In this document: one piece after another, positions 1,865-60,500 of the stretch
How the letters are laid out: each line of letters opens with the position of its first letter
Position numbering within the stretch: the stretch's first letter is position 1
Source of the DNA: Octopus sinensis
Taxonomy: Eukaryota
NCBI RefSeq assembly: GCF_006345805.1
Contig: NC_043004.1
Span: 77,376,001-77,440,000, forward strand
Length of the DNA: 64,000 bases
Reading direction: 5' to 3'
The notes under the pieces: model-generated
Told to the model about the DNA's origin: nothing
Database searches by the model: none
What the model saw: only the letters and a program-made list of their open reading frames with translations
Translations under genes and position numbers: made by a program

Positions 1865-1897
<33 letters not shown>

Positions 1898-2357
1898 CAT
1901 ATATACATACATACATACATACGTACATACATGCATACATACATACATACATACATACATACATGCATGCATACACACATACATACATACATACATACGT
2001 ACATACATGCATACACATACACCATTCATACATTCATACATACATACATACATACATACATAATACATACATACATACATACATACATACATACATACAT
2101 ACATACGTACGTACATACATACATACATACATACATACACATACATACATACATACATACATACGTACGTACATACATACATACATCTACATACATACAT
2201 ACAACACATACATACATACATCATACATACATACATACATACATATATACATATATACATACATACATACATACGTACATACATGCATACATACATACAT
2301 ACATACATACATACATACATACATACATACATACATACATACATACATACATACACT
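1540..2357. repeat. Long (CATA)n microsatellite with variant units, interrupted near 1610-1700
   Basis: Directly visible tetranucleotide array; source of the YIHT/MYVC pseudo-ORFs. Confidence 0.95.
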
Positions 2358-2657
2358 AGATTTATTATAGCTGTTCTAACAAATTTGCATAAAAATCGTT
2401 TGGAAATAATAGAATTTTCCAAGAAAGAGCATAAAATTAATCTTGCATCTCATTCGTTCGGTTAGTTGCGTATTGAAAATTGCTAAAATATTCCAATGTT
2501 TTCCATTTGAGCTTCCCGGAAGGAACATAGACACACAATTAAATGAGTGCATATAGCATTCACATATAAAGACTATATCTGATACACGAATCTTTAGAAG
2601 AACCGCTCATCATATCTACAGAATTGTATGCGTGGGTACATATCTCAGAAGCTGGAG

Positions 2658-16737: not shown

Positions 16738-17005
16738 TATACAAAAATCATCAGGACAACTACGTGATACAAAAAAGGACAACAAAGTCTAGATAGACGA
16801 TACAAAAGAAACAAGGACGAGTCATTCGAAGCTTTCTATCCTCAGTCAAGAACCAGATCATCCTCGTAATTTCGGCTGATTAATCTTGAGATTACTCCAA
16901 TCTGGCCAGCCCCAAGGAAAACTAAGCTAAGAGCATCAGATTCCTTGGAAGAAAGCATCGAATGTATACGAAAACAAGGACGGAAAACAGACGATGTTAC
17001 ACTAT
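16738..17005. repeat. Dispersed repeat, probably a Penelope-like pseudo-LTR fragment
   Basis: ggacaactacgtgatacaaaaaaggacaacaaa recurs inverted at about 57275-57350; family assignment is inferred. Confidence 0.4.
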
Positions 17006-17081
17006 ATACAATATACATACAATAAAAATAATAATAATAATAATCTATATATATATATAATATATATATAAATATATAGAA

Positions 17082-17112
<31 letters not shown>

Positions 17113-17113
17113 A

Positions 17114-17282
17114 GGCGTAGGAGTGGCTACGTGGTAAGTAGCTTGCTTACGAACCGTATGTTCCAGGTTAAGTCCCACTGCAGGCACCTTGGACAAGTGT
17201 CTTCTACTATAGCCTCGAGCTGACCAAAGCCTTGTGAGTGGATTTGGTAGATGGAAACTGAAAGAAACCCGTCGTATATATG

Positions 17283-17350
<68 letters not shown>

Positions 17351-17540
17351 TCCCCACCCCAACATTGCTTGACAACAGATACTGGTGTGTTTACATCCCC
17401 GTAACTAAGTGATTCGGTCAAAGAGACCGATATAATAAGTACTAGGCTTACAAAGAATAAGTCCTGGGGTCGATTTGTTCAACTAAAAGGCAGTGCTCCA
17501 GCATGGCCACAGTCACATGACTGAAACAAATAAAAGAGAG
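17114..17540 (+). mobile_element. SINE family A, full length
   Basis: ggcgtaggagtggct head through gaaacaaataaaagagag tail, with central (TA)/(TG) array. Confidence 0.9.
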
Positions 17541-21070: not shown

Positions 21071-21460
21071 TTACTCATTTACATGTTTCAGTCATGTGAC
21101 TGTGGTCATGCTGAAGCACCGTCTTTAGTCGAGCAAATCTACCCCAGGATTTATTCTTTGTAAGCCTAGTACTTATTTTATCGGTCTATTTTGCCGAACC
21201 GCTAAGTTACGGGGACGTAAACACACCAGTATCGGTTGTCAAGCGATGTTGTGAGGACAAACACAGACACAGAAACACACATATATACATATACATATAT
21301 ACGACAGGCTTCTTTCAGTTTCCGTCTACTAAATCCACTCACAAGGTTTTGGTCGGCCCGAGGCTATAGAAGACACTTGCCCGAAGTGCCACACAGTGGG
21401 ACTGAACCCGGAACCATGTGGTTGGTAAGCAAGTTACTTACAACACAGCCACTCTTGCGC
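21071..21460 (-). mobile_element. SINE family A, full length
   Basis: Reverse complement of the family A sequence, head to tail. Confidence 0.9.
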
Positions 21461-21834
21461 ATGCGTGTGTGTGTGTGTGTATGCGTGTGTATGTATTCTG
21501 CACATTCATGTGTTTGTGTGTGCATGCTTGTGTTGTGTGTGTGTGTGTGTGCGCGCGCGCGTGTGTGTGTGTGTGTGTGTGTGTTGTGTGTGTGTGTGTG
21601 TGTGCTTCTGTCTCCTTACATGTGTGTGTTTGAGTGTATCTATGGGTTTGTGTGACTTTTGTTTGTTTCTATTAGAACTTACCTGGAGATAAACAACTAC
21701 GACAACACTATCGTTATCATCAACAATAAGAAACCAATGAAAGAATACAAAATTAAAAGAATCTAAATTCAGAATTATCAACAAGCAACATCTATTAAAA
21801 ACTCTATTTCCAAACATAGAACATCTTTATATAT

Positions 21835-24677: not shown

Positions 24678-25808
24678 ATGGCTAGCCACCAAAAATCCAA
24701 CAAAAACTGGTCTGATAATGAAGTCGACGTTCTTATCAACACATGGCATGGCCTTACCGAAGCAGAGAGCATAGGTGCTTCGTGTCTGAACGAAATTGCC
24801 AAACGAACAGTTCACCATTTGCAAACTCGATCTGAACAGCAGATACAAAATAAATTAAAACAAATCGAAGTTGCTTTTAAATTAATAAATAAACACTTCG
24901 ATAAACTGAGATGTGTTTTCTCTTCGAACGCATCACCGGCGCAACAACAACAACAACAACCTCAACAACAACAAACTCAGCGGCAACAACAACAACAACA
25001 GCTACAGCAACAACAACAACTTCAGCAGCAACAACCTCAGAGGCAACAACAACAACCTCAACAACAACAACAGGATGAACCACTCCTTGATTCATCTACA
25101 ATGGCCGATTTGCTAAATGAAACGATTGACCCCCCAGTCATCAGGGTCACACAGCAGGAAGCACCACCCCTTCCTTTCACTGCCCCAGCAGCTCAATCAT
25201 CATCATTGTCAACACCATCTCCTCTGCTTCCTACTACTAGTACTACTCCCACTATATATCGACAAACATCTTTGTCTTGGAATCGACCTCCTCAATCATT
25301 ACCACTGTCAACATCTCTTCTACCTACTACTACTACTACTACAGCTACTACTACTAATGCTATCTCAAGGAATTTACCTCCTACAGGTCACAAAGGTCGC
25401 CAAAACTTCAACAAACTATCATCTACACCTTTCACAGCTCACACACACGCACCTACACACCCACTCGAAACCCCATCATTTGCCGATATTCTCTTCGCCA
25501 TAGACTGTGCACTGATAGAGACTGCAAATTCACCCATTTACCTGGAACAAAACGCTCTATCCCCACAAACTACAACAGCAACCACCATAATACAACATCA
25601 CCACAACCACCAATATCTCAAACAAGGAATCCCCAAATCTGCCGCTATTCCCAGCGAGACAGATTGTGTTTGCACAGGGATTGCCCCTTTACCCATCTCC
25701 CGGGGACTCGTCGGACATTTAAAGATAACCACTCACATAAAAATAGCCGCGGCCACAGTCACCTGCGGTTCCCTAGACAGGAAACCACCTCTTCTTCCTC
25801 TTTTTTAG
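24678..25808 (+). CDS. LINE ORF1-like protein: N-terminal Myb/SANT (trihelix)-like domain, polyQ, Ser/Thr/Pro-rich linker; true C-terminus probably in the -1 frame
   Basis: WSDNEVDVLINTW...EIAKR...RSEQQIQNKLKQI (residues 11-63) resembles trihelix Myb/SANT domains; CAA-rich polyQ at 24942-25073. Confidence 0.65.
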   Translation: MASHQKSNKNWSDNEVDVLINTWHGLTEAESIGASCLNEIAKRTVHHLQTRSEQQIQNKLKQIEVAFKLINKHFDKLRCVFSSNASPAQQQQQQPQQQQTQRQQQQQQLQQQQQLQQQQPQRQQQQPQQQQQDEPLLDSSTMADLLNETIDPPVIRVTQQEAPPLPFTAPAAQSSSLSTPSPLLPTTSTTPTIYRQTSLSWNRPPQSLPLSTSLLPTTTTTTATTTNAISRNLPPTGHKGRQNFNKLSSTPFTAHTHAPTHPLETPSFADILFAIDCALIETANSPIYLEQNALSPQTTTATTIIQHHHNHQYLKQGIPKSAAIPSETDCVCTGIAPLPISRGLVGHLKITTHIKIAAATVTCGSLDRKPPLLPLF

Positions 25809-27721
25809 CTATAATGAATCTAGCAAAAGAACTGGAAAAAAATCCGAGCTATCACCCACCGCCATCCACCACTATTACCCCACTACACATGCCATTAAAA
25901 AGCAATCAAATAAACAAATCACCAAAACAATTAAAACCATCCACTCTCGCCTCAACATTTCAGCTTAATGCCCAAGGCATCAGCCCTTCCACCAATACAC
26001 AAAAATGGAAGATAAGATTCCTGGAGGACTGGGTCGAGGCCCATCCAAACCACATCCCTTTCTTCGTCCTCACTGAAACCCATCTTAGTGACCTCCACTT
26101 GGAAGCCGAGGTGAAAGTTAAAAATTTCAAAACCATTCGTGCCGATCGTGCTGGCAGAAGAAAAGGTGGGACTGCCATTTATGTCCATGATTCATTCTCA
26201 ACAGAAGCCATGAACATATTTTCGAATGGATACTGCGAAGCAGTCGCTGTATTCAGTCAAACCAACAACTTAACAGTAGTTGGGCTCTACAGACCACCCC
26301 AAACGCCCCTACCATGCTTCAAGGAATGCCTCAACAGCATAAAGTGTTTCATTCAGCAGTGTCAACCTGACAACATTTTAATGATGGGAGATTTCAACCT
26401 TCCCGGGGTTGACTGGTCTACAAACAGTCTGCCGCCAGGTTCTTCTCTCTCAACCCCTGACAGGGAGGCAGTGGAATCGCTTCTTGACTTCATGGATGAC
26501 TTCTTCTTGTCCCAACTGGTACTCGAACCAACGAGATGTCACAAAAACGTCTTAGACTTAATTTTCAGCAATCACACTGATACTATCCACAATATTGCAG
26601 TGGAGAAAACCCTACTCTCCGACCTTGACATGGTTCTCTGTGATCTGAGATTTCACTGGCCAAAATGCAAAACAAATGTCATCCCTCCTGTTCATCCATT
26701 TGACACTATGGATTTCCACAATGCAAACTGGGAAGCGATCAATAATGATCTTGCACAAGTCGATTGGTCCTTCACGCACACATACACACCCACTAACATC
26801 AAAAAGTCCTGGCAGACACTTGTAGACACCATCACGAACATATGTGCAAGACACACCCCATTAAGATCTGCAAACAAATCTAAGTGTCGAATCCCTAGAA
26901 ATAGAAAATCTCTCATAAGGAAAATTAAAAGAATCAACAAAAAGATCAACATGCTGAAATACTGTCAACAGCAACACACCAACCTGACTGCCATCTCGTC
27001 GCTAGAGATTAAAAAACATAAACTCCAAAACAACATGATGTCTATCATCAATAGTCAGCGAAGAGCTGAAGAGGCCTGGGCCATTGAGAAGATCAAACTC
27101 AATCCCAAAGTGTTCTTTTCATTTGCAAAAAAACACAGAGTCACTGGTTCTACTGTTGGCCCTCTGATTGATGAAAATGGTACTCTTCAAGACAATGCCA
27201 AAACCATGGGAGAAATATTGCAGAAACAATATTGCTCTGTTTTCAGCAATCCTGATATGACTGATCTGGGCTGTATCAGTGATGTTACTCCCCAATACAC
27301 TTTATCGGACATAACATTTGGCGCTCCTGATGTCTTAGCAGCAATAAAGGAAATGAAGCATAATTCAGCAGTAGGTCCCGATAGGTTCCCTGCTTGTGTC
27401 TTGAAGATGTGTCAAAACCAACTTGCACCCCCTCTAGCCAATCTGTGGCGGAACTCATTGGATGCTGGATATATACCAGAAGACCTTCTATCCCAGTCTG
27501 TTGTCCCAGTTTTCAAAAAAGGAAACAAATCGCTTGCCGTGAATTACCGTCCAATCTCACTCACCTCTCATATCATCAAGGTATTTGAGAGGGTGCTGAG
27601 ATCGCGTATGACTCACTTCCTTGAGAGTCATAATATGCTGAACCCCAACCAGCATGGTTTCCGTATTGGGAGAGATTGCCTGACGCAGCTACTGCATCAT
27701 TTTTGCCCGACCCCACCTTGA
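25358..27721 (+). CDS. Stop-free frame encoding two CCCH zinc fingers, APE endonuclease and N-terminal RT (truncated by deletion)
   Basis: Frame is open from after TAA at 25355-25357. Fingers CRYSLRHRLCTDRDCKFTH (25481-25537) and CRYSQRDRLCLHRDCPFTH (25640-25696); APE motifs LTETH, RADR, GGTAIY, MGDFN, LDLIF; RT motifs KKGNK, NYRPISLTS, NQHGFR. Confidence 0.9.
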   Translation, partial: CYLKEFTSYRSQRSPKLQQTIIYTFHSSHTRTYTPTRNPIICRYSLRHRLCTDRDCKFTHLPGTKRSIPTNYNSNHHNTTSPQPPISQTRNPQICRYSQRDRLCLHRDCPFTHLPGTRRTFKDNHSHKNSRGHSHLRFPRQETTSSSSFLAIMNLAKELEKNPSYHPPPSTTITPLHMPLKSNQINKSPKQLKPSTLASTFQLNAQGISPSTNTQKWKIRFLEDWVEAHPNHIPFFVLTETHLSDLHLEAEVKVKNFKTIRADRAGRRKGGTAIYVHDSFSTEAMNIFSNGYCEAVAVFSQTNNLTVVGLYRPPQTPLPCFKECLNSIKCFIQQCQPDNILMMGDFNLPGVDWSTNSLPPGSSLSTPDREAVESLLDFMDDFFLSQLVLEPTRCHKNVLDLIFSNHTDTIHNIAVEKTLLSDLDMVLCDLRFHWPKCKTNVIPPVHPFDTMDFHNANWEAINNDLAQVDWSFTHTYTPTNIKKSWQTLVDTITNICARHTPLRSANKSKCRIPRNRKSLIRKIKRINKKINMLKYCQQQHTNLTAISSLEIKKHKLQNNMMSIINSQRRAEEAWAIEKIKLNPKVFFSFAKKHRVTGSTVGPLIDENGTLQDNAKTMGEILQKQYCSVFSNPDMTDLGCISDVTPQYTLSDITFGAPDVLAAIKEMKHNSAVGPDRFPACVLKMCQNQLAPPLANLWRNSLDAGYIPEDLLSQSVVPVFKKGNKSLAVNYRPISLTSHIIKVFERVLRSRMTHFLESHNMLNPNQHGFRIGRDCLTQLLHHFCPTPP

Positions 27722-28042
27722 ATACTGCTGTCCACTGTGGTCTCCCTACACAAAACAAAATATTATGAGAATTGAAGCTCCCCAAAGGTCAATCACAAAA
27801 AAGATAGATGGCATGTCAGACCTTGAATTTTGTGTGGTCAGTTTCTTTTTTGACGTGTCCTGGTGTAATGTTGAAGAGAGCGGGTCCAATTGAGGTGAAA
27901 TAGTTGTGCCGTATTGTCGTTATGTGATGCGATTTAGATTTTTGTTGTGGACGGATGGCACGTGGTCCAAGCCTTGGATGCATTTTGAAGGTGATGCCAA
28001 CATCATTCGGACAGTGCTGATGGAATATTTTCCACATCATAC

Positions 28043-28080
<38 letters not shown>

Positions 28081-28091
28081 ATATATATGCA

Positions 28092-29308: not shown

Positions 29309-30661
29309 TTAACAAGAATGCTGCAAATTTTCTGATGAAACACTTGCAAAAGGTTCGCGTTTGACTATCAAATCACAATAGTTTCCTGCGTAATAATACA
29401 CATGCATCGTTCGTGACGATCGATTCTGACCTGGTGGATCATAAGCTTTCCAGAAATATTCATCATTCGATACACGAACGAGAGCTTCAACTTTTGTCAT
29501 AAACATCACTGAAAATGCAAGAATTTGTTTATCTTCGCGTGTTGAGTGGCCGAGTAATTTAGATCTACAATTTGGGTCCTTGTCATCACATTTGAAATTG
29601 TAATCTAAACGCATAGAAAAAATATCAATTATCTGTCGTAGTTTATCATGAAAGTTGATATTTCCGAACAGAAAGATGCTGGCACACATGAAGAAGTCGG
29701 TGTTATCGCCACTGTTAAAACCGACATTGATTTCGGCACCTTGTTCCTGGCCTTTTTTCTTTGCAGTTCGAGGTGACGTATTCTCATCGCTATGGACAAA
29801 TGCATCACAATTCATATTTTCCACCCGGTTAACTTCAACAAAGTCAATATTTTGAATGTAATAGCGAAACTTATGGTGAGTTTCTAACCTCATGTTATGT
29901 TTGATCCAGTTTTCCACAGTTAACCTTTTATTTGATCCCAACATATGTCTATTGGAAGTATTTGAAGCATTATTAGCATTTGTTCCATCAGTTTTATCCA
30001 AATTCAGCAAAACATCTTGGCAATTCTTCGTATTTGATATATGAGGTGAATCAATTCCAGAACTAGATTCGTCAGTTCTTCTTTCGTTCTCCGTCTTGTC
30101 ATTTCCCAAACTCCCCTTTACAGGCTTCTCTTTTTCTCTTCCTGAATCGCATTCTAATGTTAAATTTGACATAGAGATGTTACCATTTTCCATGATTTCT
30201 TTTCCCCCCTTTATGCAAATACTTTCTTTTAGCAAAGTATTTTTAGCAGCTTCTTCACTTTCTATAACATTATTGATGCCTAGTTCGTTTTCTTTTTGAT
30301 TTAGATTATCATCCTCTGATGTATCTTTCACAGGAAATACACTTTTCCCTCCTTTTATCTCAACAATTCTTTGCGAATTCGAAGCAAACGGAACGCAACG
30401 ATACTTTCTACTGTCATGCTTAACATTTTCTTTTGGTAAGTTTTCTCTTCTTTTCCCTCCTTCAGTCTGCATTGAGTGACTTCCTGGTCTTTGAGTTCTT
30501 GTGGTTGAATAAAACGTTTCACAACCCACAAGCCATGATTTTCCTTTCCGATATTTTTTAGTAACAATTTCTGTAAAACGCTCCTCCATATACACTGAAG
30601 AACCACCATCGTCAGACCAATAATTTGAATTTTCGTCCATTTTTTCGTTATCATCAGCCAT
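29309..30661 (-). CDS. Single-exon 450-aa protein, low-complexity N-terminal region and C-terminal OTU-like domain lacking catalytic Cys and His
   Basis: Intact ORF, probable start MADDNEK at 30661. GDNTDFFMCASIFLFGNINFHDKLRQ aligns to the OTU motif GDGNCLFRAxSxxLxGxxxxHxxLR (Cys position = Asp); YYYAGNYCDLI aligns to YHxGNHYD (His position = Tyr). Alignment done by eye. Confidence 0.7.
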   Translation of the reverse strand: MADDNEKMDENSNYWSDDGGSSVYMEERFTEIVTKKYRKGKSWLVGCETFYSTTRTQRPGSHSMQTEGGKRRENLPKENVKHDSRKYRCVPFASNSQRIVEIKGGKSVFPVKDTSEDDNLNQKENELGINNVIESEEAAKNTLLKESICIKGGKEIMENGNISMSNLTLECDSGREKEKPVKGSLGNDKTENERRTDESSSGIDSPHISNTKNCQDVLLNLDKTDGTNANNASNTSNRHMLGSNKRLTVENWIKHNMRLETHHKFRYYIQNIDFVEVNRVENMNCDAFVHSDENTSPRTAKKKGQEQGAEINVGFNSGDNTDFFMCASIFLFGNINFHDKLRQIIDIFSMRLDYNFKCDDKDPNCRSKLLGHSTREDKQILAFSVMFMTKVEALVRVSNDEYFWKAYDPPGQNRSSRTMHVYYYAGNYCDLIVKREPFASVSSENLQHSC

Positions 30662-31134
30662 ATTTAAGAAGACTATGTACAAATATACATTTACAGACGA
30701 AAAGCCAACCGAAATGAACGTCTGTTGGAAACGATGGAGTCCTCCCCGTGTGTTGAGAGAGAAGCCCTCACCTGTGTTGGGACAATGATAGTTCAATCCC
30801 AAATGTTTCCCACTAGACACAGCAGACTAGTTTCAAAACGATTCCATAAACAACACAGGTCTTTAAGCAAAACTGAAGCTAAAAGTACTCAGTTAAAGGA
30901 ATTTTCAACGTTAATTTTATCGATTTATTGCAAGAGAATAAAGTCATATGATTAAATACGTTTTCAAAAGTTGTGTTACGTTTTGCGTACGTCATAAATA
31001 AAATGCTTCAAAACATGAGTTTAAAACGTAGTAATAATAATCATAGCTACTATTCAAATTTTTGGAGTGTTTGCTAATTATATCAACTTCAGTACTTGAC
31101 TAGTATTTTATTTTATCGACCCAGAAAGCAATCG

Positions 31135-35666: not shown

Positions 35667-36883
35667 AATAGCTCCTTTCCCCAGAAAAGGAAAGATTTGG
35701 CTGCTATTTCTTGCACACCCTGCTACCACGTAATAGATATTTCGGGTCCTTTATCGCAAATAGCTGCTACGTGGTAGCAGGGCGTGCTAGAAATAGCAGC
35801 CAAATCTTTCGAGCTGAGATACGTTGAATGCACTCGAAAAACGTTTTGTAACGGTATTCCCTTGGGGCGATCATTCATTCACTTAATCATTTAGTTTCGT
35901 TTTAACGTGAAAGAGAGGAGAAAATGAAAGATGTATGAACATGTATATGAAATGGACGTGTGTGTATGAGAGAGAGGAGGGAGAGAGAGTGCCACTTACA
36001 CATACATGAGAACACACACACGTTCATTCACTTACTCTTTCTCTCTCTCTCTCACACACGTACACACACACATATGCACACGTACATACATTGATGTATG
36101 TACGTATACATGACAACACACCCCTTCACCCACTCTTTCTATCTCTTTCTTTTTATCTTTCTCTCTCTTTCTTCCTCTCTCTCTTTCGCTCTCTCTCTCT
36201 CTCTCTCTCTATTTCTCTCTCTCTTTTACACACACACGTCTATTTCATATACACGCACATACATCTTTCACTTTCTCCTCTCTTTCACTTTAAAACAAAA
36301 GTAAATAAATAGAAATTTTTTACGGAAATTAACGAATTTCGGATGACAGTTCTGAAAGTCAAAACGAAAGATCGCCATTCATTTGAAAATAATTTTTAAA
36401 AAACAATTAAAATATTGTCTGTTTAAAGAAAGCTAAAATATAAATACTTACTGTACAAACAACTTAAATTTTTGAAATCACATTCAGTTAAAAAATATTT
36501 CTAAATGCTTGAAATATTGTGTACGTCAAAATGTCGACGTTTTTTTTTCTTAAAGATGCAAAGACTATGTGTGTGTATATGTCACAGATAGAGGACGTGT
36601 GCTTGTGTTGATTGACACTCCATGGCAATCATTATGTGTGTGTGTATTCTGTATGTGTGTTGACGTCACGGAAGCCATGTCTTTTTTTCGTCAAGAAATA
36701 ACAAAGAAAAATTGCGTTTAATCGTTTTCATTAATAAATAGACGTCCAAATATCACAAAAATTTGTATTGCACTGCCGAAGGTAAGTATGAAGATAAATA
36801 TGCAAAAAAAAATTAAGATAAAATATTATTTCTGAGATATTTCGGGTACACACACAAACATCTCTAGAGTTCTAGTATTATCA

Positions 36884-39760: not shown

Positions 39761-40435
39761 TCAATTTTTCAAAATTAAGTCGAAATGATGTCTAGCTTCA
39801 TTAAAAAGCTGTATAGAACAAATGGACACGTTGGGCGCGATACCATGCGGTGTAGTAGAGGACCAGAAATACGGAGCTTCCTTTCCTCCCGTCAGAATAT
39901 CTATTCTTCGGTGAAACAAATGTGCAGCAGCATATATTTCACACTCAGTAGCGCAAGTGTTAGTTTCTAACATTGATTTGATGTGTTCCAGTACAGAAAC
40001 TTTCGGTTGTGGCGCCGGATGTTCATCGATATACAAACAGTACAAGTAATTCGCTACCAACACTCTGAATTGTCTGTGATATTTCGAACTACCAGTAAAA
40101 TACTGAGACAAACATCGAAAGAAGGAGTTTCCGTCCTTAATTTGAAGAAGAATTTTCCATTGAGGGTTTTTGGTTTCTGGAGCCACTTGCTGTTCCGGAC
40201 CATGTGGCATAAAATAAAACACTGGTTGGTTAAGCGAATCATTAGATTCTATTTCCCACAAACTGGCCGTCTGAGTTGTTAATTCTTGCGATTCATCATC
40301 TTTCTTTTGTAAGACTTTTTGCTTTTGATACTCTTCATACACTGGGTGTTTTTCTGAACCACCGAGACATTCTTCTATTTGTTGTTGACAAAGGGGTTTA
40401 GAACTATCATTTATCTGGCTAGAATCTCCCTCCAT
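39761..40435 (-). CDS. Single-exon 224-aa protein with C-terminal OTU domain, catalytic Cys replaced by Ser
   Basis: Intact ORF; KDGNSFFRCLSQYFTGSSKYHRQFR, ATECEIYAAAHLF and HHFDLI match OTU motifs, with His and Asp retained. Confidence 0.8.
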   Translation of the reverse strand: MEGDSSQINDSSKPLCQQQIEECLGGSEKHPVYEEYQKQKVLQKKDDESQELTTQTASLWEIESNDSLNQPVFYFMPHGPEQQVAPETKNPQWKILLQIKDGNSFFRCLSQYFTGSSKYHRQFRVLVANYLYCLYIDEHPAPQPKVSVLEHIKSMLETNTCATECEIYAAAHLFHRRIDILTGGKEAPYFWSSTTPHGIAPNVSICSIQLFNEARHHFDLILKN

Positions 40436-41422: not shown

Positions 41423-41640
41423 ATGGATGCCAAAGTCTTCGAGAGAAGCCTACCAGACGACCCAACTGAGGAAGGTTATATTTACTGGAAACGGAAGCTA
41501 CATATCTACACAGCAAAAGCAAAGGTTCCAGATGAATCTAAACTGGAGGTACTCTTAGTCCTCTGCAGAGCAAGGACCTACCCCATCGTCGAAGAATCCG
41601 AAACCTTCGAGGCAGCAATAGAACGCCTGGACTCAAAATT
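41423..41640 (+). pseudogene. Ty3/Gypsy gag N-terminal fragment
   Basis: YWKRKLHIY...KLEVLLVLC...FEAAIERLDSKF resembles Gypsy gag N-termini; follows the LTR candidate. Confidence 0.6.
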
Positions 41641-42198
41641 CAGGTAGAATGGTTCCCACTGTCGATGATCTTGAAAATTTAAGCATTCTCTCATGAGAGG
41701 TTGTGTTGGTAGCTGTACCAGGGAATCCTCTTGTGGTTGATAATGCCACGGGTAGAACTGTTAACCATTGTCTTTTATCTAGTTGTAGTGAACTAAGTGC
41801 TAGATTTATGGTCTTCATGAGGGTACCGTTGGTCCTTTCACATTGGCAATTGCCTTGAGGTCGATAGGGAGATGTTCTAGTTGTTATTGTCCCGTTAGCG
41901 TGAAGGAAGCCCTGGAGCTTCTTATTATCAAATTGGGTTCCTCTGAGAGAGTGGATACAACTTGGTGATCCAAACAATGAAAAGAGGTTGAGCAGGTCGG
42001 AAGTTACTGTTTTGGTACTCAAGTCTTTGCATGGGTATGCGAATGGGTACCTTGAGTACTCATCGACTATTACCAATAAATAGCAGTATTATGTGGTTGA
42101 TGGCAGGGGACCAACAAAGTCAATGGAGAGGCGCTCCCAAGGTCTCGATGCCTGTATTAATTGACCCTTAAGTGGTTTGTGGAAGCGGGATTTGAGTT
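41633..42198 (-). pseudogene. Ty3/Gypsy integrase core fragment, inverted relative to gag
   Basis: PWERLSIDFVGPLP, LVIVDEYSRYPFA, FGSPSCIHSLRGTQF, YRPQGNCQCERTN; one stop at about 42090. Confidence 0.9.
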
Positions 42199-42356: not shown

Positions 42357-45300
42357 TGTATGTATGCATGTATGTATGTATGTATGTATGTATGTATGCA
42401 TGTATGTATGTATGCATGTATGTATGTATGTATGTGTGTGTATGTATGTATGTATGTATGTATGTATGTATGTATGTATGTATGTATGTATGCATGTATG
42501 TATGTATGTATGTATGTATGTATGCATGTATGTATGTATGTATGTATGTATGTATGCATGCATGTATGTATGTATGTATGTATGTATGTATGTATGTATG
42601 CATGTATGTATGTATGTATGTGTGTGTATGTATGTATGTATGTATGTATGTATGTGCAGATTTGTATGTATGTGTGTATGTATTCTCACGAATATAGTTG
42701 CATATCTAGACATGCTCATATATATTTAAATGATAAACTTCTGGAAAGGTTTACAGATTTTTACAGTTCCAATGATGGATTGGATCTCTAGTCTCCAAAT
42801 TAGCTTTCTCCTTTCTGGGTTTGAGAAGCCTAATTTCTCAAGATTGGTATTTAGGCAGCGTGTTACATATACCAGGGCCCCAATAATTACAGGTATAAAT
42901 CTGAACTTGTAATCTGGATAGAGTAAACTGCAGATTTCTCAATAGTTCAGCAAAGGTGTTCTCTTTTTCACTGATCTTCTGGTTTATATTAACATCCGCT
43001 GGGCAGCTGATTTCCACAACCATGCACAGTTTCTCTTCTCTATCCCAAATCATTATATCAGGTCTGTTGTGCTTACATTTTATTGAGGTCTTCACTGGGA
43101 CATTCCACCAGTACTCCTTTTTATTATGAGTGGTTATGGCTTCTACCATATTGTGGGTTCTCATTTCTTTTATCCTCGGGATTATCCTTCCAACAGATTC
43201 CATTATAGAATGTCCTAGCTACAGCGTCATGTCTCATCGGTAGATAATACCGTGGTGACATTTTCGAAAACTTGCTTATGATGTGGGTGATATCTTCAGT
43301 GTGAACTCCACAAAGTCAGCATCGGTTGTTATATCTTACAGCTTTTCGTGCATCTCTATCCCTTTTGTGCATCGGGTATTTGGTTGATATTTCCTGTTCC
43401 TGAATTATAAACGTATTGCCTTCAAAGTGGGAGGGAGTAATCCGGCTACTTGTCCATGATAAACTACTTTGATGATCGATGTTACTATCATCACGCAGCT
43501 TTCTACTAACATATCCATGCATAGTCTTTTGCTCATATAGACTCATCCTTTCATCTGATGATACGTTGCGGAAGAGTCGTACGACTTCTTTGGACATGTA
43601 TTCCAGGTTATGAGACAAAGCATGTTGCTCAAGGAACTGCCTTCCAAGTCTTATAATGTTATCAGCTTCATGTATGCAAACTTGGTGGTTAGAAGATGTT
43701 GCCGAAGGGATATGATGCGACATTCAAAGGTATTTTGGATCGATGTTAGGCCTCTGCCACCTTGTTTTCGTTTTAGGTGGTGGTGGTGGTGGACTACGTC
43801 ACTGTTTGTGTGGAAATTATGTGTGCTTGTTAGTATTTTGGGGGTTTTCACATCAATGGCTCGAATCTCATCAAGTGTCTAATCAAGCAGCCCAAATGTT
43901 GGTATGAGTATTGGCACTGCAAACACATTGTAGGCCACTGTTTTATTGGATGCAGGTCCAAATTTTCTTTATTTTTGAGGTCCAAATTTTCTTTATTTTT
44001 GAGGTCCAAATTTTCTTTATTCGGCTGTAATATTCTTTAGGACACGTGTTTTGTTACACGTGCCAGTGTAAGCTATATTTCATTCACCCGTAGATACCTC
44101 AGACATTCCCCGTCAGATACTGGGGAAACAGTCAAATCATTGATGGAGATGTTACTAGTCTGGTTTATAGCTTTTCCCCTTTTAACAACCATATAACAGC
44201 ATTTATGCTGACCAAACTCCAACCCTACATCCTTTGAGGATGTTGTAACTAGGTCAAGGCTCTTTTTCATCTCATGCATATTCTTTGCATAAAGTTTTAA
44301 ATCATCCACAAAGAAACAGTGTGTAATTTTGGTGTTTCTGTTCCCTTGTGAACCAGTGAGATATCCTTCAGACTTCCTTAACATGAATGACAAGGGGTTT
44401 ACAGAAAGTATAAACAACATCACAGAGAGGCTGTCTCCTTGGAATATGCCTCTGCGATGCTGTATTCCATCTGTGATAATACAGCCATTCTTTGTGCTTA
44501 ATTTCAAGATGGTGGCCTATGAGGAAGTCAGGTCAGCTATGGCTTTGACTATTCTCACTGGAACTTTAGTAAGTTGTAGGGCTTCTAGCATCCATGAGTG
44601 GGGAACAGAGTCAAAGGCTTTCTTGTAATCTATCCACATTGAAACTAGGTTTTTCCTATGCTCTCACACCTCTGACATCACAGTTTTGTTGATTAACAAT
44701 TGCTCGGCACATCCCCAGATTCCTCTCTTCCCAGCTGCTTGTTCTTCTGTGATAATGGTCCTAGAGCAAGAGGTTTAAACATCTTGTACATTCATTTCTG
44801 ACATACAATTGACCGGTAGTTTTTTGCCATGTGGGTGGTTCTGCATTTGGGGATCAATTTTGTCTCTGCCAGAGCTAACCAGTGTGATATACTACTGTTC
44901 CCAATGAAAGCTTTCTGGTACAGAATGATAAGATATGGTCGGTAGAATGCAGGAGCAGTAACTTTTTCGGATTTCAGCCACAGAGAATCTTGATTAAATT
45001 CCTTCTCTTCACTCCAAATTTTCCTCCAGAAGGAGTCTATGTCTTCTCGATAAGGAACTTCCGTGATGTTTCTGCTCCTCCTCTCATATCTCTGTATACT
45101 GCTGCCTGGTTGCGGTTAAATTTTTTTATTTATTGTTCTTCTCTCGGTTATTCTCTTCTGATGTCGGAGTTTTCCTCTGACAGCTTTTAACTCCTGATTG
45201 AGGGTTATCAGTTTGCAAGCGATGAGTGCCCTCTTTTTGCTGTCACCAAACATCATTTCTAACTTCTTTACTTTCTGTTGGTGGAACGTTTAGTGATTTG

Positions 45301-46954: not shown

Positions 46955-47363
46955 GCTGGACTTGGTTGTGTGGTTAAGAAGCTTGCTTTACAACCAAGTG
47001 GTTTCAGGTTCAGTGCCACTAGGCGGCATTTGGGACAAGTGTCTTCTTATTTCTTTATTGCCCACAAGGGGCTAAACACAGAGGGGACAAACAAGGACAG
47101 ACAAACGGATTAAGTCGATTACATCGACCCAGTACGTAACTGGTACTTAATTTATCGACCCCGAAAGGATGAAAGGCAAAGTTGACCTCGGCGGAATTTG
47201 AACTCAGAACGTAAAGACAGACGAAAATCTGCTAAGCATTTCGCCCGGCGTGCTAACGTTTCTGCCAGCTCGCTGCCTTTGGGACAAGTGTCTTCTACTG
47301 TAGCCCCGGACCGACCATTGCCTTGTAAGCGAATTTGGTGAAAGTGTGGAAGGTTGCTGTATA

Positions 47364-47425
<62 letters not shown>

Positions 47426-47710
47426 AGCGTGCGTGCGTGTGTGTGTGTGCATTGTAGACACTTGGTTGGATGGTTGGATGGTTGGATGGTCGGCTGGCTG
47501 GTCTCTGGAAGGGAAGTGTGTTTGTGTCTGTCCATGACCACCACCGCTTGACAACTGGTATTCTTCAATGTCTCCGTAACTTAGCGGTTCCACAACCGAT
47601 ACCAATACAATAAGTACCAGACTTAGGTCTGGTACTTATTCTATCGATCTCTTTAAAAAAAAAATAAGCACTGGAGTCGATTAGTTCGACCAATATTCTT
47701 CAAGGCTGAA
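46955..47710 (+). mobile_element. SINE family A interrupted by a family B SINE
   Basis: Head at 46955-47047 resumes at 47278; the 19-bp sequence tttgggacaagtgtcttct is duplicated at 47029-47047 and 47278-47296. Confidence 0.85.
47048..47277 (-). mobile_element. SINE family B, full length, with 19-bp TSD
   Basis: ggcagcgagctggcagaaacgttagcacg head to cccttgtgggcaataaagaaata tail. Confidence 0.9.
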
Positions 47711-59769: not shown

Positions 59770-60500
59770 ATACTTTGATACTTTGATAGGTTTCGGCCAT
59801 TATTGGCCCAGGCCATGTCTAACTTAATAGCACCACCTGGTGAAGTCTTTCAAGTCAGAATTGGGCACTATGGCCCACTCAAGTAGAGAGTTATTGTTAC
59901 AGAGACATATCCGGGTGTAGGGGGTTTATCCGGGATTTCTTGAAGGAATCTGTCCAAAGACTTCTTGAACCTATAGGGTCAGTTTCTGTTTTATGTGTTT
60001 TGGTGTAATGTTAAAGAGAGCGGGGCCAATTGAGGTGAAATAATTGTGCCGTATTGTTGTTATGAGATGAGAGTGCGATTTTTGTTTTGGGCGGATGGCA
60101 CGGGGCCCAAGCCTTGGATGTACCCTAAAGGTGATGCCAACATCATTTGGGCAATGCTGATGGAATATTTTCCACATGCAGATGATGTAGCGCTCACGAC
60201 GACGTTGGAGAGAATAAAGTTTTAGCTTTTCTAGTCGACCCCAATAGTCGAGGCCTGTCATGCCATCTATCTTTTTTGTGATTGCCCTTTGAGGTGCTTC
60301 AACTTTTATGATACCTTGTATTGTGTGGGGGAGAACAAGTGGACAACAGTATTCAAGGTGGGGTCGGGCAAAAGTGGAGAAGAGAAGGATAATGGTGTGG
60401 ATATCTCTCGACTGGAAAGTTCTGAGAATCCAGGAACACATTCTGCGGGCCATGTCAACTTTGGTGTTTATGTGAGTGGCTCAGCTTACGTTGTTGTCCA
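59770..60500 (-). mobile_element. 5'-truncated CR1-group LINE, same family as 24240-28048, with 3' UTR and (TATCAAAG)2 tail
   Basis: ARRMCSWILRTFQSRD...ARPHLEYCCPL...IEAPQRAITKKIDGM...LYSLQRRRERY...SIGPALFN; nucleotide similarity to 27702-28048 is visible. Confidence 0.9.

What the first reader, a model, noticed from the sequence alone, without database searches (positions are those of the whole stretch)
29309..30672. 450-aa ORF with a doubly inactivated OTU-like domain
Seen: by-eye alignment puts Asp at the catalytic Cys (GDNTD versus GDGNC) and Tyr at the catalytic His (GNYCD versus GNHYD), while scaffold residues (F, S, LFG, H-KLRQ) are kept. A TAG followed by tcttcttaaatATG gives a candidate 3' splice site 11 nt before the probable start. 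Inference: keeping the scaffold and 451 open codons while losing both catalytic residues suggests a non-catalytic function.
Basis: partly seen in the sequence, partly recalled or inferred. Interest (0 to 1): 0.7.

Follow-up and report, generated by a model that had tools for sequence, protein, structure and literature searches.

The report
Conserved catalytically dead OTU-like octopus gene
This is an intact, evolutionarily conserved octopus gene whose C-terminal domain descends from the OTU deubiquitinase gene lying 9 kb away but has Asp and Tyr where the catalytic Cys and His should be, so it is most likely a non-catalytic "pseudo-deubiquitinase", a known kind of protein.

Summary
The ORF is real: minus strand 29309..30661, 450 codons plus stop. 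It matches the annotated Octopus vulgaris hypothetical protein CAI9727381.1.

Pfam, a PDB profile search, a profile search of 1.84 billion proteins, and Smith-Waterman against human OTUD1/OTUD3 (z<=2) all fail to link it directly to OTU.

The link runs through a neighbouring ORF at 39761..40435 (-):
- The neighbour is a genuine OTUD-like OTU (Pfam PF02338; PDB OTUD3 E 1.9e-9).
- All four family members match it over the whole domain (shuffle z 8.7-13, P 1e-6 to 1e-8; hhalign 76%).
- The same OTU-then-pseudo-OTU gene order occurs in a distant species (L006).
- Asp322 sits at the Cys position and Tyr428 at the His position, in all four orthologues.

dN/dS is 0.20-0.26 overall and 0.07-0.16 in the domain, so this is a functional gene, not a pseudogene.

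The structure test was inconclusive (pLDDT 52; the best Foldseek hits are OTU domains, but at E~1).

The proposed 3' splice acceptor is not conserved (TAG is TAT in the sister species), and no transcript data were available.

In Octopus the neighbouring OTU itself has Ser at the nucleophile.

Verdict: an independent, lineage-restricted pseudo-DUB, analogous to OTULINL. Modest interest.

The parts
29309..30661 (-). Complete CDS of the pseudo-OTU protein (450 aa plus TAA stop). It appears to be a single coding exon.
   Evidence: ORF list and sequence. It matches CAI9727381.1 'Hypothetical predicted protein [Octopus vulgaris]' in all but one residue (E293D); that model starts at Met8. In the sister species an in-frame TGA lies two codons upstream of the ATG, so 30661 is the earliest conserved start.
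30494..30601 (-). N-terminal conserved block, residues 21-56 (SSVYMEERFTEIVTKKYRKGKSWLVGCETFYSTTRT). This is the most constrained part of the protein. It has no known relatives.
   Evidence: Nearly invariant in all orthologues. dN/dS is 0.03 and 0.05. AF2 draws a beta-hairpin here, but at very low confidence. There is no significant PDB hit.
29930..30493 (-). Poorly conserved, charged, low-complexity linker, residues 57-244. It is probably disordered.
   Evidence: The alignment is full of indels. dN/dS is 0.30-0.36. AF2 predicts no secondary structure.
29825..29929 (-). Second conserved block, residues 245-279 (KRLTVENWIKHNMRLETHHKFRYYIQNIDFVEVNR). It has no known relatives.
   Evidence: Conservation. 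dN/dS is 0.10-0.15. There is no significant PDB hit.
29357..29719 (-). Pseudo-OTU domain, residues about 315-435, of the small OTUD type.
   Evidence: BLASTP against the neighbouring OTU gives E 9e-8 over 128 aa. The shuffle test gives z 8.7-13. hhalign gives 66-76% probability and E 2e-5 over 116-117 columns. dN/dS is 0.16 and 0.065. The AF2 model has pLDDT 52.5, and 13 of 21 Foldseek hits are OTU domains, though none is significant.
29696..29698 (-). GAC codon for Asp322, at the position of the OTU nucleophile Cys.
   Evidence: Alignments. Invariant in all four orthologues.
29378..29380 (-). TAT codon for Tyr428, at the position of the OTU catalytic His.
   Evidence: Alignments. Invariant in all four orthologues.
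30673..30675 (-). Not supported.
   Evidence: The orthologous site in the sister species reads TAT. No RNA data were available.
39761..40435 (-). Tandem paralogue: a 224-aa OTUD-like OTU gene, 9.1 kb upstream on the same strand. The nucleophile position is Ser104 (TCC, 40124..40126). The catalytic His217 (39785..39787) is retained.
   Evidence: Pfam PF02338 gives E 3e-4; the L006 orthologue gives 2.5e-10. A PDB profile search gives OTUD3 1.9e-9 and OTUD1 1e-7. Ser is present in two Octopus species and Cys in L006. dN/dS of the OTU domain is 0.107. The same gene order occurs in L006.

Best explanation
The ORF is a functional, single-copy, lineage-restricted gene. Only four orthologues were found among billions of proteins. 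It encodes a pseudo-deubiquitinase. Its C-terminal ~120 residues descend from an old tandem duplication of the adjacent OTUD-like OTU gene. Since then the nucleophile Cys has become Asp, the general-base His has become Tyr, and the Asp of the DxxC motif is no longer conserved. The domain therefore cannot carry out papain-type isopeptide hydrolysis. Shown here: the homology, the substitutions, their invariance across orthologues, the purifying selection, and the conserved gene order. Inferred: the retained OTU scaffold works as a binding module, for ubiquitin or a ubiquitin-like protein, for a substrate, or for the active paralogue. It is joined by a long disordered linker to two short, very strongly constrained motifs (residues 21-56 and 245-279) that probably dock other partners. 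On this reading the protein acts as an adaptor, scaffold or regulator rather than an enzyme, as described for other pseudo-DUBs such as OTULINL/FAM105A.
For: The ORF is intact at 450-561 codons in four species. dN/dS is 0.26 in the Octopus pair and 0.20 in the second lineage. Within the pseudo-OTU domain it is 0.16 and 0.065, and within the N-terminal block 0.03 and 0.05. Homology to the neighbouring OTU is supported by BLASTP E 9e-8, shuffle z 8.7-13 and P 1e-6 to 1e-8 for all four members, and hhalign at 66% and 76% probability over the whole domain. The neighbour is a real OTU. The same OTU-upstream, same-strand arrangement occurs in a species that is only 44% identical. Asp322 and Tyr428 are invariant. 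The gene is not a mobile element: there is one cluster per species, no flanking TIR or LTR, and conserved synteny. There is a precedent: the OTULINL pseudo-DUB has Asp139 in place of Cys129 (PMC7862380; PMC3705208).
Against: No direct match to OTU models or structures was found, so the homology depends on one intermediate family. The structure models are of low confidence (pLDDT 30 and 52.5) and Foldseek gives no significant hit. The second model's alignment also included the OTU neighbour, so its OTU-leaning hits are not independent evidence. No expression evidence was obtainable. The binding or scaffold role is pure inference, with no partner identified. The similarity of the family to the L006 copy of the OTU is weak (z 3-4).
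Confidence: 0.72

Rival explanations
1. The domain is still an enzyme that uses a relocated or non-canonical active site, for example the invariant Cys326, Cys429 and His420, or Asp322 acting as a nucleophile or acid.
For: Cys326, Cys429 and His420 are invariant in the family, and purifying selection on the domain is strong.
Against: Cys326 is inherited from the OTU ancestor: it is the Cys in the FFRCLS helix of the neighbour, one helical turn after the nucleophile. Cys429 aligns with the aromatic residue of the H[FY]D motif, whose side chain points away from the His side of the strand; this rests on established OTU structures and is an inference. No papain-fold hydrolase with an Asp/Tyr pair at these positions is known to me.
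Confidence: 0.08
2. The resemblance to OTU is a chance or compositional match, and the C-terminal domain is an unrelated orphan fold.
For: There is no Pfam, PDB or 1.84-billion-protein profile hit outside the family. Smith-Waterman against OTUD1/OTUD3 is not significant. tblastn of the domain against the window does not recover the neighbour. AF2 draws helices where OTU has strands, though at pLDDT about 40.
Against: Twelve family-by-neighbour comparisons were run; the eight against the Octopus OTU give P 1e-6 to 1e-8, with end-to-end collinear alignment of the motifs. Adding human OTUs to the profile raises hhalign probability from 66% to 76%. The best match is the adjacent gene in two distant genomes, as expected for a tandem duplicate. 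The Foldseek top list is dominated by OTU domains.
Confidence: 0.1
3. It is a decaying pseudogene or a fortuitously open ORF without function.
For: It is orphan-like and intronless, sits in a repeat-rich region, and is annotated only as 'hypothetical'. No expression data were found.
Against: It is open in four species, including a pair with dS about 1. dN/dS is 0.2-0.26 overall and as low as 0.03-0.07 in the blocks. Conservation is block-wise, which is typical of a folded and linear-motif protein.
Confidence: 0.04
4. It is a gene of a transposon or an endogenous virus that carries an OTU protease.
For: LINE and LTR-element fragments lie nearby, and OTU proteases occur in viruses (for example the nairovirus vOTU hits).
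Against: Each species has a single cluster with 1-5 members. No terminal repeats flank the gene. The two-gene synteny is conserved across deep divergence, with unrelated intergenic DNA. The neighbour is closest to cellular OTUD3/OTUD1.
Confidence: 0.04

Closest known systems
OTULINL / FAM105A (vertebrate OTU-class pseudo-deubiquitinase)
   Same: It is an OTU-derived paralogue of an active DUB with a disrupted catalytic triad, and it has the same Cys-to-Asp replacement (Asp139). It is retained as a functional non-catalytic protein. From my own knowledge, not tested here, it also lies next to its active paralogue OTULIN in the genome.
   Different: It is not an orthologue. OTULIN-type domains are large (220-270 aa), whereas this domain is of the small OTUD type (~120-150 aa). 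OTULINL keeps His350, whereas here the His is also lost (Tyr). OTULINL has an N-terminal membrane-localisation motif, whereas this protein has two unrelated orphan motifs and a long disordered linker. No sequence search linked the two.
The adjacent OTUD-like OTU gene (window 39761..40435; orthologue L006 1885..2541)
   Same: It is the closest detectable relative. It is collinear over the whole OTU domain, sharing FF-C-S, G, H..(L/F)R, (Y/P)(F/V)W and DLI. It lies on the same strand, and the tandem arrangement is conserved.
   Different: Identity is only ~22%. The neighbour keeps the catalytic His and, outside Octopus, the Cys. It is 224 aa long and lacks the N-terminal block, the linker and the middle block.
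Human OTUD3 / OTUD1 (PDB 4bou, 4bop), OTUD subfamily
   Same: These are the closest solved relatives of the neighbour family (E 1.9e-9 and 1e-7), and they are the top although non-significant Foldseek matches of the domain model. The domain size is the same.
   Different: They are active cysteine isopeptidases with a DGNC...H[YF]D triad. Direct similarity to the octopus pseudo-domain is not significant.

Membership tests
OTU superfamily (Pfam PF02338, OTUD-like) | Match to the family profile at or above the curated threshold | tested here: not met
   There is no OTU hit even at E<=10 for the octopus protein, and none at E<=1 for P0003/P0004. The family profile finds no PDB OTU and nothing outside the family among 1.84 billion proteins.
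OTU superfamily (Pfam PF02338, OTUD-like) | Significant full-domain homology to a bona fide OTU protein | tested here: met
   The link goes through the tandem neighbour: BLASTP 9e-8, shuffle P 1e-6 to 1e-8, and hhalign 66-76% over 116-117 columns. The neighbour is itself OTU.
OTU superfamily (Pfam PF02338, OTUD-like) | Nucleophile Cys at the N-terminus of helix 1 (D-G-N-C motif) | tested here: not met
   Asp322 occupies this position (D-N-T-D in Octopus, N-N-E-D in the other clade) and is invariant in four orthologues.
OTU superfamily (Pfam PF02338, OTUD-like) | Catalytic His in the C-terminal H-[YF]-D strand | tested here: not met
   Tyr428 occupies this position (N-Y-C-D) and is invariant in four orthologues.
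OTU superfamily (Pfam PF02338, OTUD-like) | OTU alpha/beta fold | tested here: inconclusive
   The AF2 domain model has pLDDT 52.5, with only the helical lobe at 59-75. Foldseek against the PDB gives a best E of 0.96, although 13 of 21 listed hits are OTU domains.
OTU superfamily (Pfam PF02338, OTUD-like) | Deubiquitinase / isopeptidase activity | not testable with these tools
   This needs a biochemical assay.
Pseudo-deubiquitinase (pseudoenzyme of a DUB family) | Descent from an active DUB family, with catalytic residues replaced consistently across orthologues | tested here: met
Pseudo-deubiquitinase (pseudoenzyme of a DUB family) | Maintained by purifying selection (not a pseudogene) | tested here: met
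   dN/dS is 0.26 and 0.20 overall, and 0.16 and 0.065 in the domain.
Pseudo-deubiquitinase (pseudoenzyme of a DUB family) | Demonstrated lack of activity and a non-catalytic role | not testable with these tools
   This needs expression, activity probes and interaction studies.
OTULIN/OTULINL subfamily | Sequence relationship to OTULIN-type (220-270 aa) OTU domains | tested here: not met
   No OTULIN or FAM105A chain was retrieved by any PDB search. The domain is about 120 aa, the OTUD size class.

The most novel reading that the evidence does not exclude
In Octopus both members of the conserved tandem pair lack the Cys nucleophile: Asp in this gene and Ser (TCC) in the neighbouring OTU, the latter seen in two species. 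Both are nevertheless under purifying selection. The most novel reading not excluded is that the two proteins form a dedicated module. Either the pair is a pseudo-DUB/pseudo-DUB ubiquitin-binding pair, or the neighbour is a serine-nucleophile OTU whose activity or targeting depends on the pseudo-OTU partner. In either case it would be a cephalopod-specific innovation in ubiquitin signalling.
Probability: 0.1. Interest if true: 0.6.

Novelty: new member of a known kind. Interest (0 to 1): 0.33.

Why it matters
Pseudoenzymes of the ubiquitin system act as scaffolds and allosteric regulators, but very few OTU-class examples are known; OTULINL is the textbook case. This locus is an independent example that standard domain models cannot see. 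It has the same Cys-to-Asp change, an identifiable parent gene next door, and two ultra-conserved orphan motifs. It gives annotators a label for an otherwise 'hypothetical' cephalopod protein. It also offers a small, tractable system for asking what an OTU scaffold is kept for once catalysis is lost. It does not bear on any long-standing open question.

Tried and rejected
- **Direct family assignment failed.** Pfam on the full protein gave only DUF3991 at E 0.29. phmmer against the PDB gave only a chance DONSON hit at E 0.5. The C-terminal profile against the PDB found nothing.
- **Homologue searches found only the family itself.** Two word-indexed searches of 5.8 billion proteins and one exhaustive profile search of 1.84 billion representatives returned no OTU proteins and no relatives of the N-terminal or middle blocks.
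- **Full-length AF2 was useless** (pLDDT 29.8).
- **Splicing could not be read from the Logan contigs.** L001 is collinear with the genome and, like L007, ends in microsatellites. L002-L005 have no poly(A). I therefore treat them as genomic and draw no expression conclusion.
- **tblastn of the domain against the window and against L006 did not recover the OTU neighbour**. I replaced it with Smith-Waterman shuffle statistics.
- **The intra-locus comparison in the other species was weak.** BLASTP of P0003 against the L006 OTU gave E 0.23.
- **PDB profile searches with the two orphan blocks gave only chance hits**.
- **A literature search for the run, assembly and protein accessions found nothing**, so the two more distant species remain unidentified.
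- **The transposon or virus origin was rejected**.
- **The upstream ORF extension to the GTG at 30820 was rejected.** Indels and an in-frame stop occur in the sister species.

Full report
**What is there.**

The window is cephalopod nuclear DNA: low GC, dense microsatellites and LINE/LTR fragments. On the minus strand an ORF runs from the ATG at 30661 to the TAA at 29309..29311, giving 450 aa.

The product matches GenBank CAI9727381.1 / UniProt A0AA36B3S4, 'Hypothetical predicted protein [Octopus vulgaris]', in all but one residue (E293D). That model starts at Met8.

The open frame continues upstream to a GTG at 30820. In the sister species that stretch has 1-nt and 2-nt indels and an in-frame TGA two codons before the ATG. 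The ATG at 30661 is therefore the earliest conserved start.

**How widespread it is.**

Two word-indexed searches of 5.8 billion proteins and one exhaustive HMMER profile search of 1.84 billion cluster representatives found only the family itself. The members are:
- the O. vulgaris protein;
- an 87%-identical protein from a second Octopus species (P0002, contig L001);
- two proteins 42-44% identical to it, from two further unidentified species (P0003 on a 218-kb ENA contig, locus L006; P0004 on Logan contigs L002-L005).

Each is a single small cluster, so this is not a repeat family. No terminal repeats flank the gene.

**Is it a real gene?**

Nei-Gojobori dN/dS between the window and L001 is 0.26 overall at dS 0.25. 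By region it is 0.03 in the N-terminal block, 0.36 in the linker, 0.15 in the middle block and 0.16 in the C-terminal domain. In the independent L006/L002 pair (dS about 1) it is 0.20 overall, 0.05 in the N-terminal block, 0.10 in the middle block and 0.065 in the C-terminal domain.

The ORF is intact in all four species. This rules out a pseudogene or a chance ORF.

Expression could not be tested. The Logan contigs that carry the orthologues are collinear with the genome; the two Octopus contigs (L001, L007) end in microsatellites, and L002-L005 show no poly(A). I treat them as genomic.

**Is the C-terminal domain OTU-like?**

Direct tests fail:
- There is no Pfam OTU hit for the octopus protein even at E<=10, and none for P0003/P0004 at E<=1.
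- A profile of the four C-terminal domains finds nothing in the PDB.
- Smith-Waterman scores against the human OTUD1 and OTUD3 domains are within 2 SD of shuffled controls.

The decisive evidence is a second ORF in the window, at 39761..40435 on the same strand, 9.1 kb upstream. Together with its orthologues (P0005, 87% identical; the L006 ORF at 1885..2541, about 54% identical over the OTU domain) it is a genuine OTUD-type OTU. Pfam PF02338 gives E 3e-4 for the window copy and 2.5e-10 for the L006 copy. A profile search of the PDB gives OTUD3 at 1.9e-9 and OTUD1 at 1e-7, followed by OTUD5, OTUD2 and nairovirus vOTUs.

The target's residues 319-434 align end to end with residues 101-223 of this neighbour:
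- BLASTP gives 38 bits and E 9e-8.
- All four family members score z = 8.7-13 against shuffles of the two Octopus OTU sequences, with Gumbel P 1e-6 to 1e-8 and 0 of 2000 shuffles reaching the observed score. Scores against the L006 copy are weaker, at z 3-4.
- Profile-profile comparison gives 66% probability and E 5.7e-5 over 116 columns. This rises to 76% and E 2.3e-5 over 117 columns when human OTUD1/OTUD3 segments are added to the OTU profile.

In L006 the OTU gene again lies upstream of the family member on the same strand, 7.5 kb away. These are the only two conserved coding regions between the two loci.

The simplest reading is an old tandem duplication of an OTUD-like gene.

**Catalytic residues.**

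Asp322 falls on Ser104 of the Octopus neighbour. That position is Cys in L006 and in the DGNC motif of OTUD1/OTUD3. Tyr428 falls on His217 of the neighbour's HFD motif, which corresponds to GHYD in OTUD1.

Both Asp and Tyr are invariant in all four orthologues. The Asp of the DxxC motif is Asn in the second clade. All three triad positions are thus non-canonical.

Retained scaffold positions include F323/F324, C326 (the inherited 'FFRCLS' Cys, not a new nucleophile), S328, G333, R342, Y402/W404 and D430-L-I.

**Structure.**

AF2 on the full protein with the 5-sequence alignment gave pLDDT 29.8. The 147-residue C-terminal domain with a 6-sequence alignment that included the OTU neighbour gave pLDDT 52.5. 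Only the helical half reached moderate confidence, at 59-75.

Foldseek against the PDB returned no significant match; the best was OTUD3 at E 0.96 and TM 0.29. However, 13 of the 21 listed chains are OTU domains: OTUD3, OTUD1, OTUD5/DUBA and nairovirus vOTUs.

Because the alignment contained OTU sequences and Foldseek also scores amino acids, this is at best weak, non-independent support.

**The splice-site idea.**

The AG of the proposed acceptor (…ACATAG|TCTTCTTAAATATG) reads …ATATAT|TTTTCTGAAATATG in the sister species. The acceptor is therefore not conserved.

The 400 nt upstream are unusually well conserved for non-coding DNA and contain a conserved donor-like CAG|GTGAGG at 30772/30771. 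Without RNA data this remains open, and I regard it as unsupported.

**Mechanism.**

Shown:
- an OTU-derived domain without a nucleophile or a general base;
- conservation for a long time, together with two short, extremely constrained orphan motifs (residues 21-56 and 245-279);
- a fast-evolving, charged, indel-rich linker between them.

Inferred: a non-catalytic adaptor or regulator in which the dead OTU fold serves as an interaction surface and the motifs dock partners.

The closest precedent is OTULINL/FAM105A, an OTU-class pseudo-DUB. It also has Asp in place of the catalytic Cys, lacks activity on any di-ubiquitin, and is thought to mediate protein-protein interactions (PMC7862380; PMC3705208).

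The octopus protein is not its orthologue. It is of the small OTUD size class, it has also lost the His, and no search connects the two.

**Extra observation.**

The neighbouring OTU has Ser (TCC) at the nucleophile position in both Octopus species but Cys in L006. Its OTU domain is under purifying selection (dN/dS 0.107). In Octopus, then, neither member of the tandem pair has the canonical Cys.

**Verdict.**

The pseudo-enzyme interpretation is supported through an intermediate paralogue. The splice-site suggestion is not supported. The structure test is inconclusive.

This is a new, lineage-restricted member of a known kind, the OTU-class pseudo-deubiquitinases. It is of modest interest.

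Noticed in passing
window 39761..40435 (-), codon 40124..40126: The neighbouring OTUD-like OTU gene has Ser (TCC) instead of the nucleophile Cys in two Octopus species, but Cys in the distant orthologue (L006). The His is retained, and dN/dS of the domain is 0.107. It may be a second catalytically compromised OTU. The ORF was not found as an exact entry in the protein collection for O. vulgaris, so it may be unannotated there.
   Followed up: partly
window 30765..30775 (-) and 30662..31041: The 400 nt upstream of the start codon are about 90% identical between the two Octopus species, which is above the synonymous-site expectation.
   Followed up: no
window 24678..25808 (+) and 25664..27721 (+): There is a 376-aa ORF with a weak Myb/SANT-like (Myb_DNA-bind_4) N-terminus and long poly-Q/poly-T tracts. 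It overlaps the start of a 685-aa LINE-type ORF, which has an apurinic-like endonuclease plus the beginning of a reverse transcriptase and appears truncated.
   Followed up: partly
window 41633..42076, 43316..43723, 44073..44507 (all -): Fragments of retroelement genes (integrase core rve, reverse transcriptase RVT_1) lie just upstream of the OTU neighbour. They are decayed retrotransposon remnants.
   Followed up: partly
window 27816..28082 (-) and 59971..60453 (-): Two ORFs share a near-identical C-terminal peptide (…WKIFHQHCPNDVGITF…HPRLGPRAIRP…TTIRHNYFTSIGPALFNITP…). They are probably two copies of the same retroelement tail.
   Followed up: no
window 17002..17421, 21236..21655, 47152..47605: A repeated SINE-like unit is adjacent to (CA)n/(TA)n microsatellites; its translation contains …SFSF.L.NPLTR.WSARGY.RRHL…. 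A 33-nt core of it matches L006 418..450 at 97%.
   Followed up: no
window 35690..35810 and 35884..36311: There are two compact inverted repeats in the intergenic region between the two OTU-family genes: 53-nt arms at 91% with a 15-nt loop, and 93-nt arms at 86% with a 242-nt spacer. They look MITE-like.
   Followed up: no
window 29783..29785 (-), residue 293: The window encodes Glu293 where the deposited O. vulgaris protein CAI9727381.1 has Asp. This is a single-residue difference in the poorly conserved loop, either a polymorphism or a different assembly.
   Followed up: no
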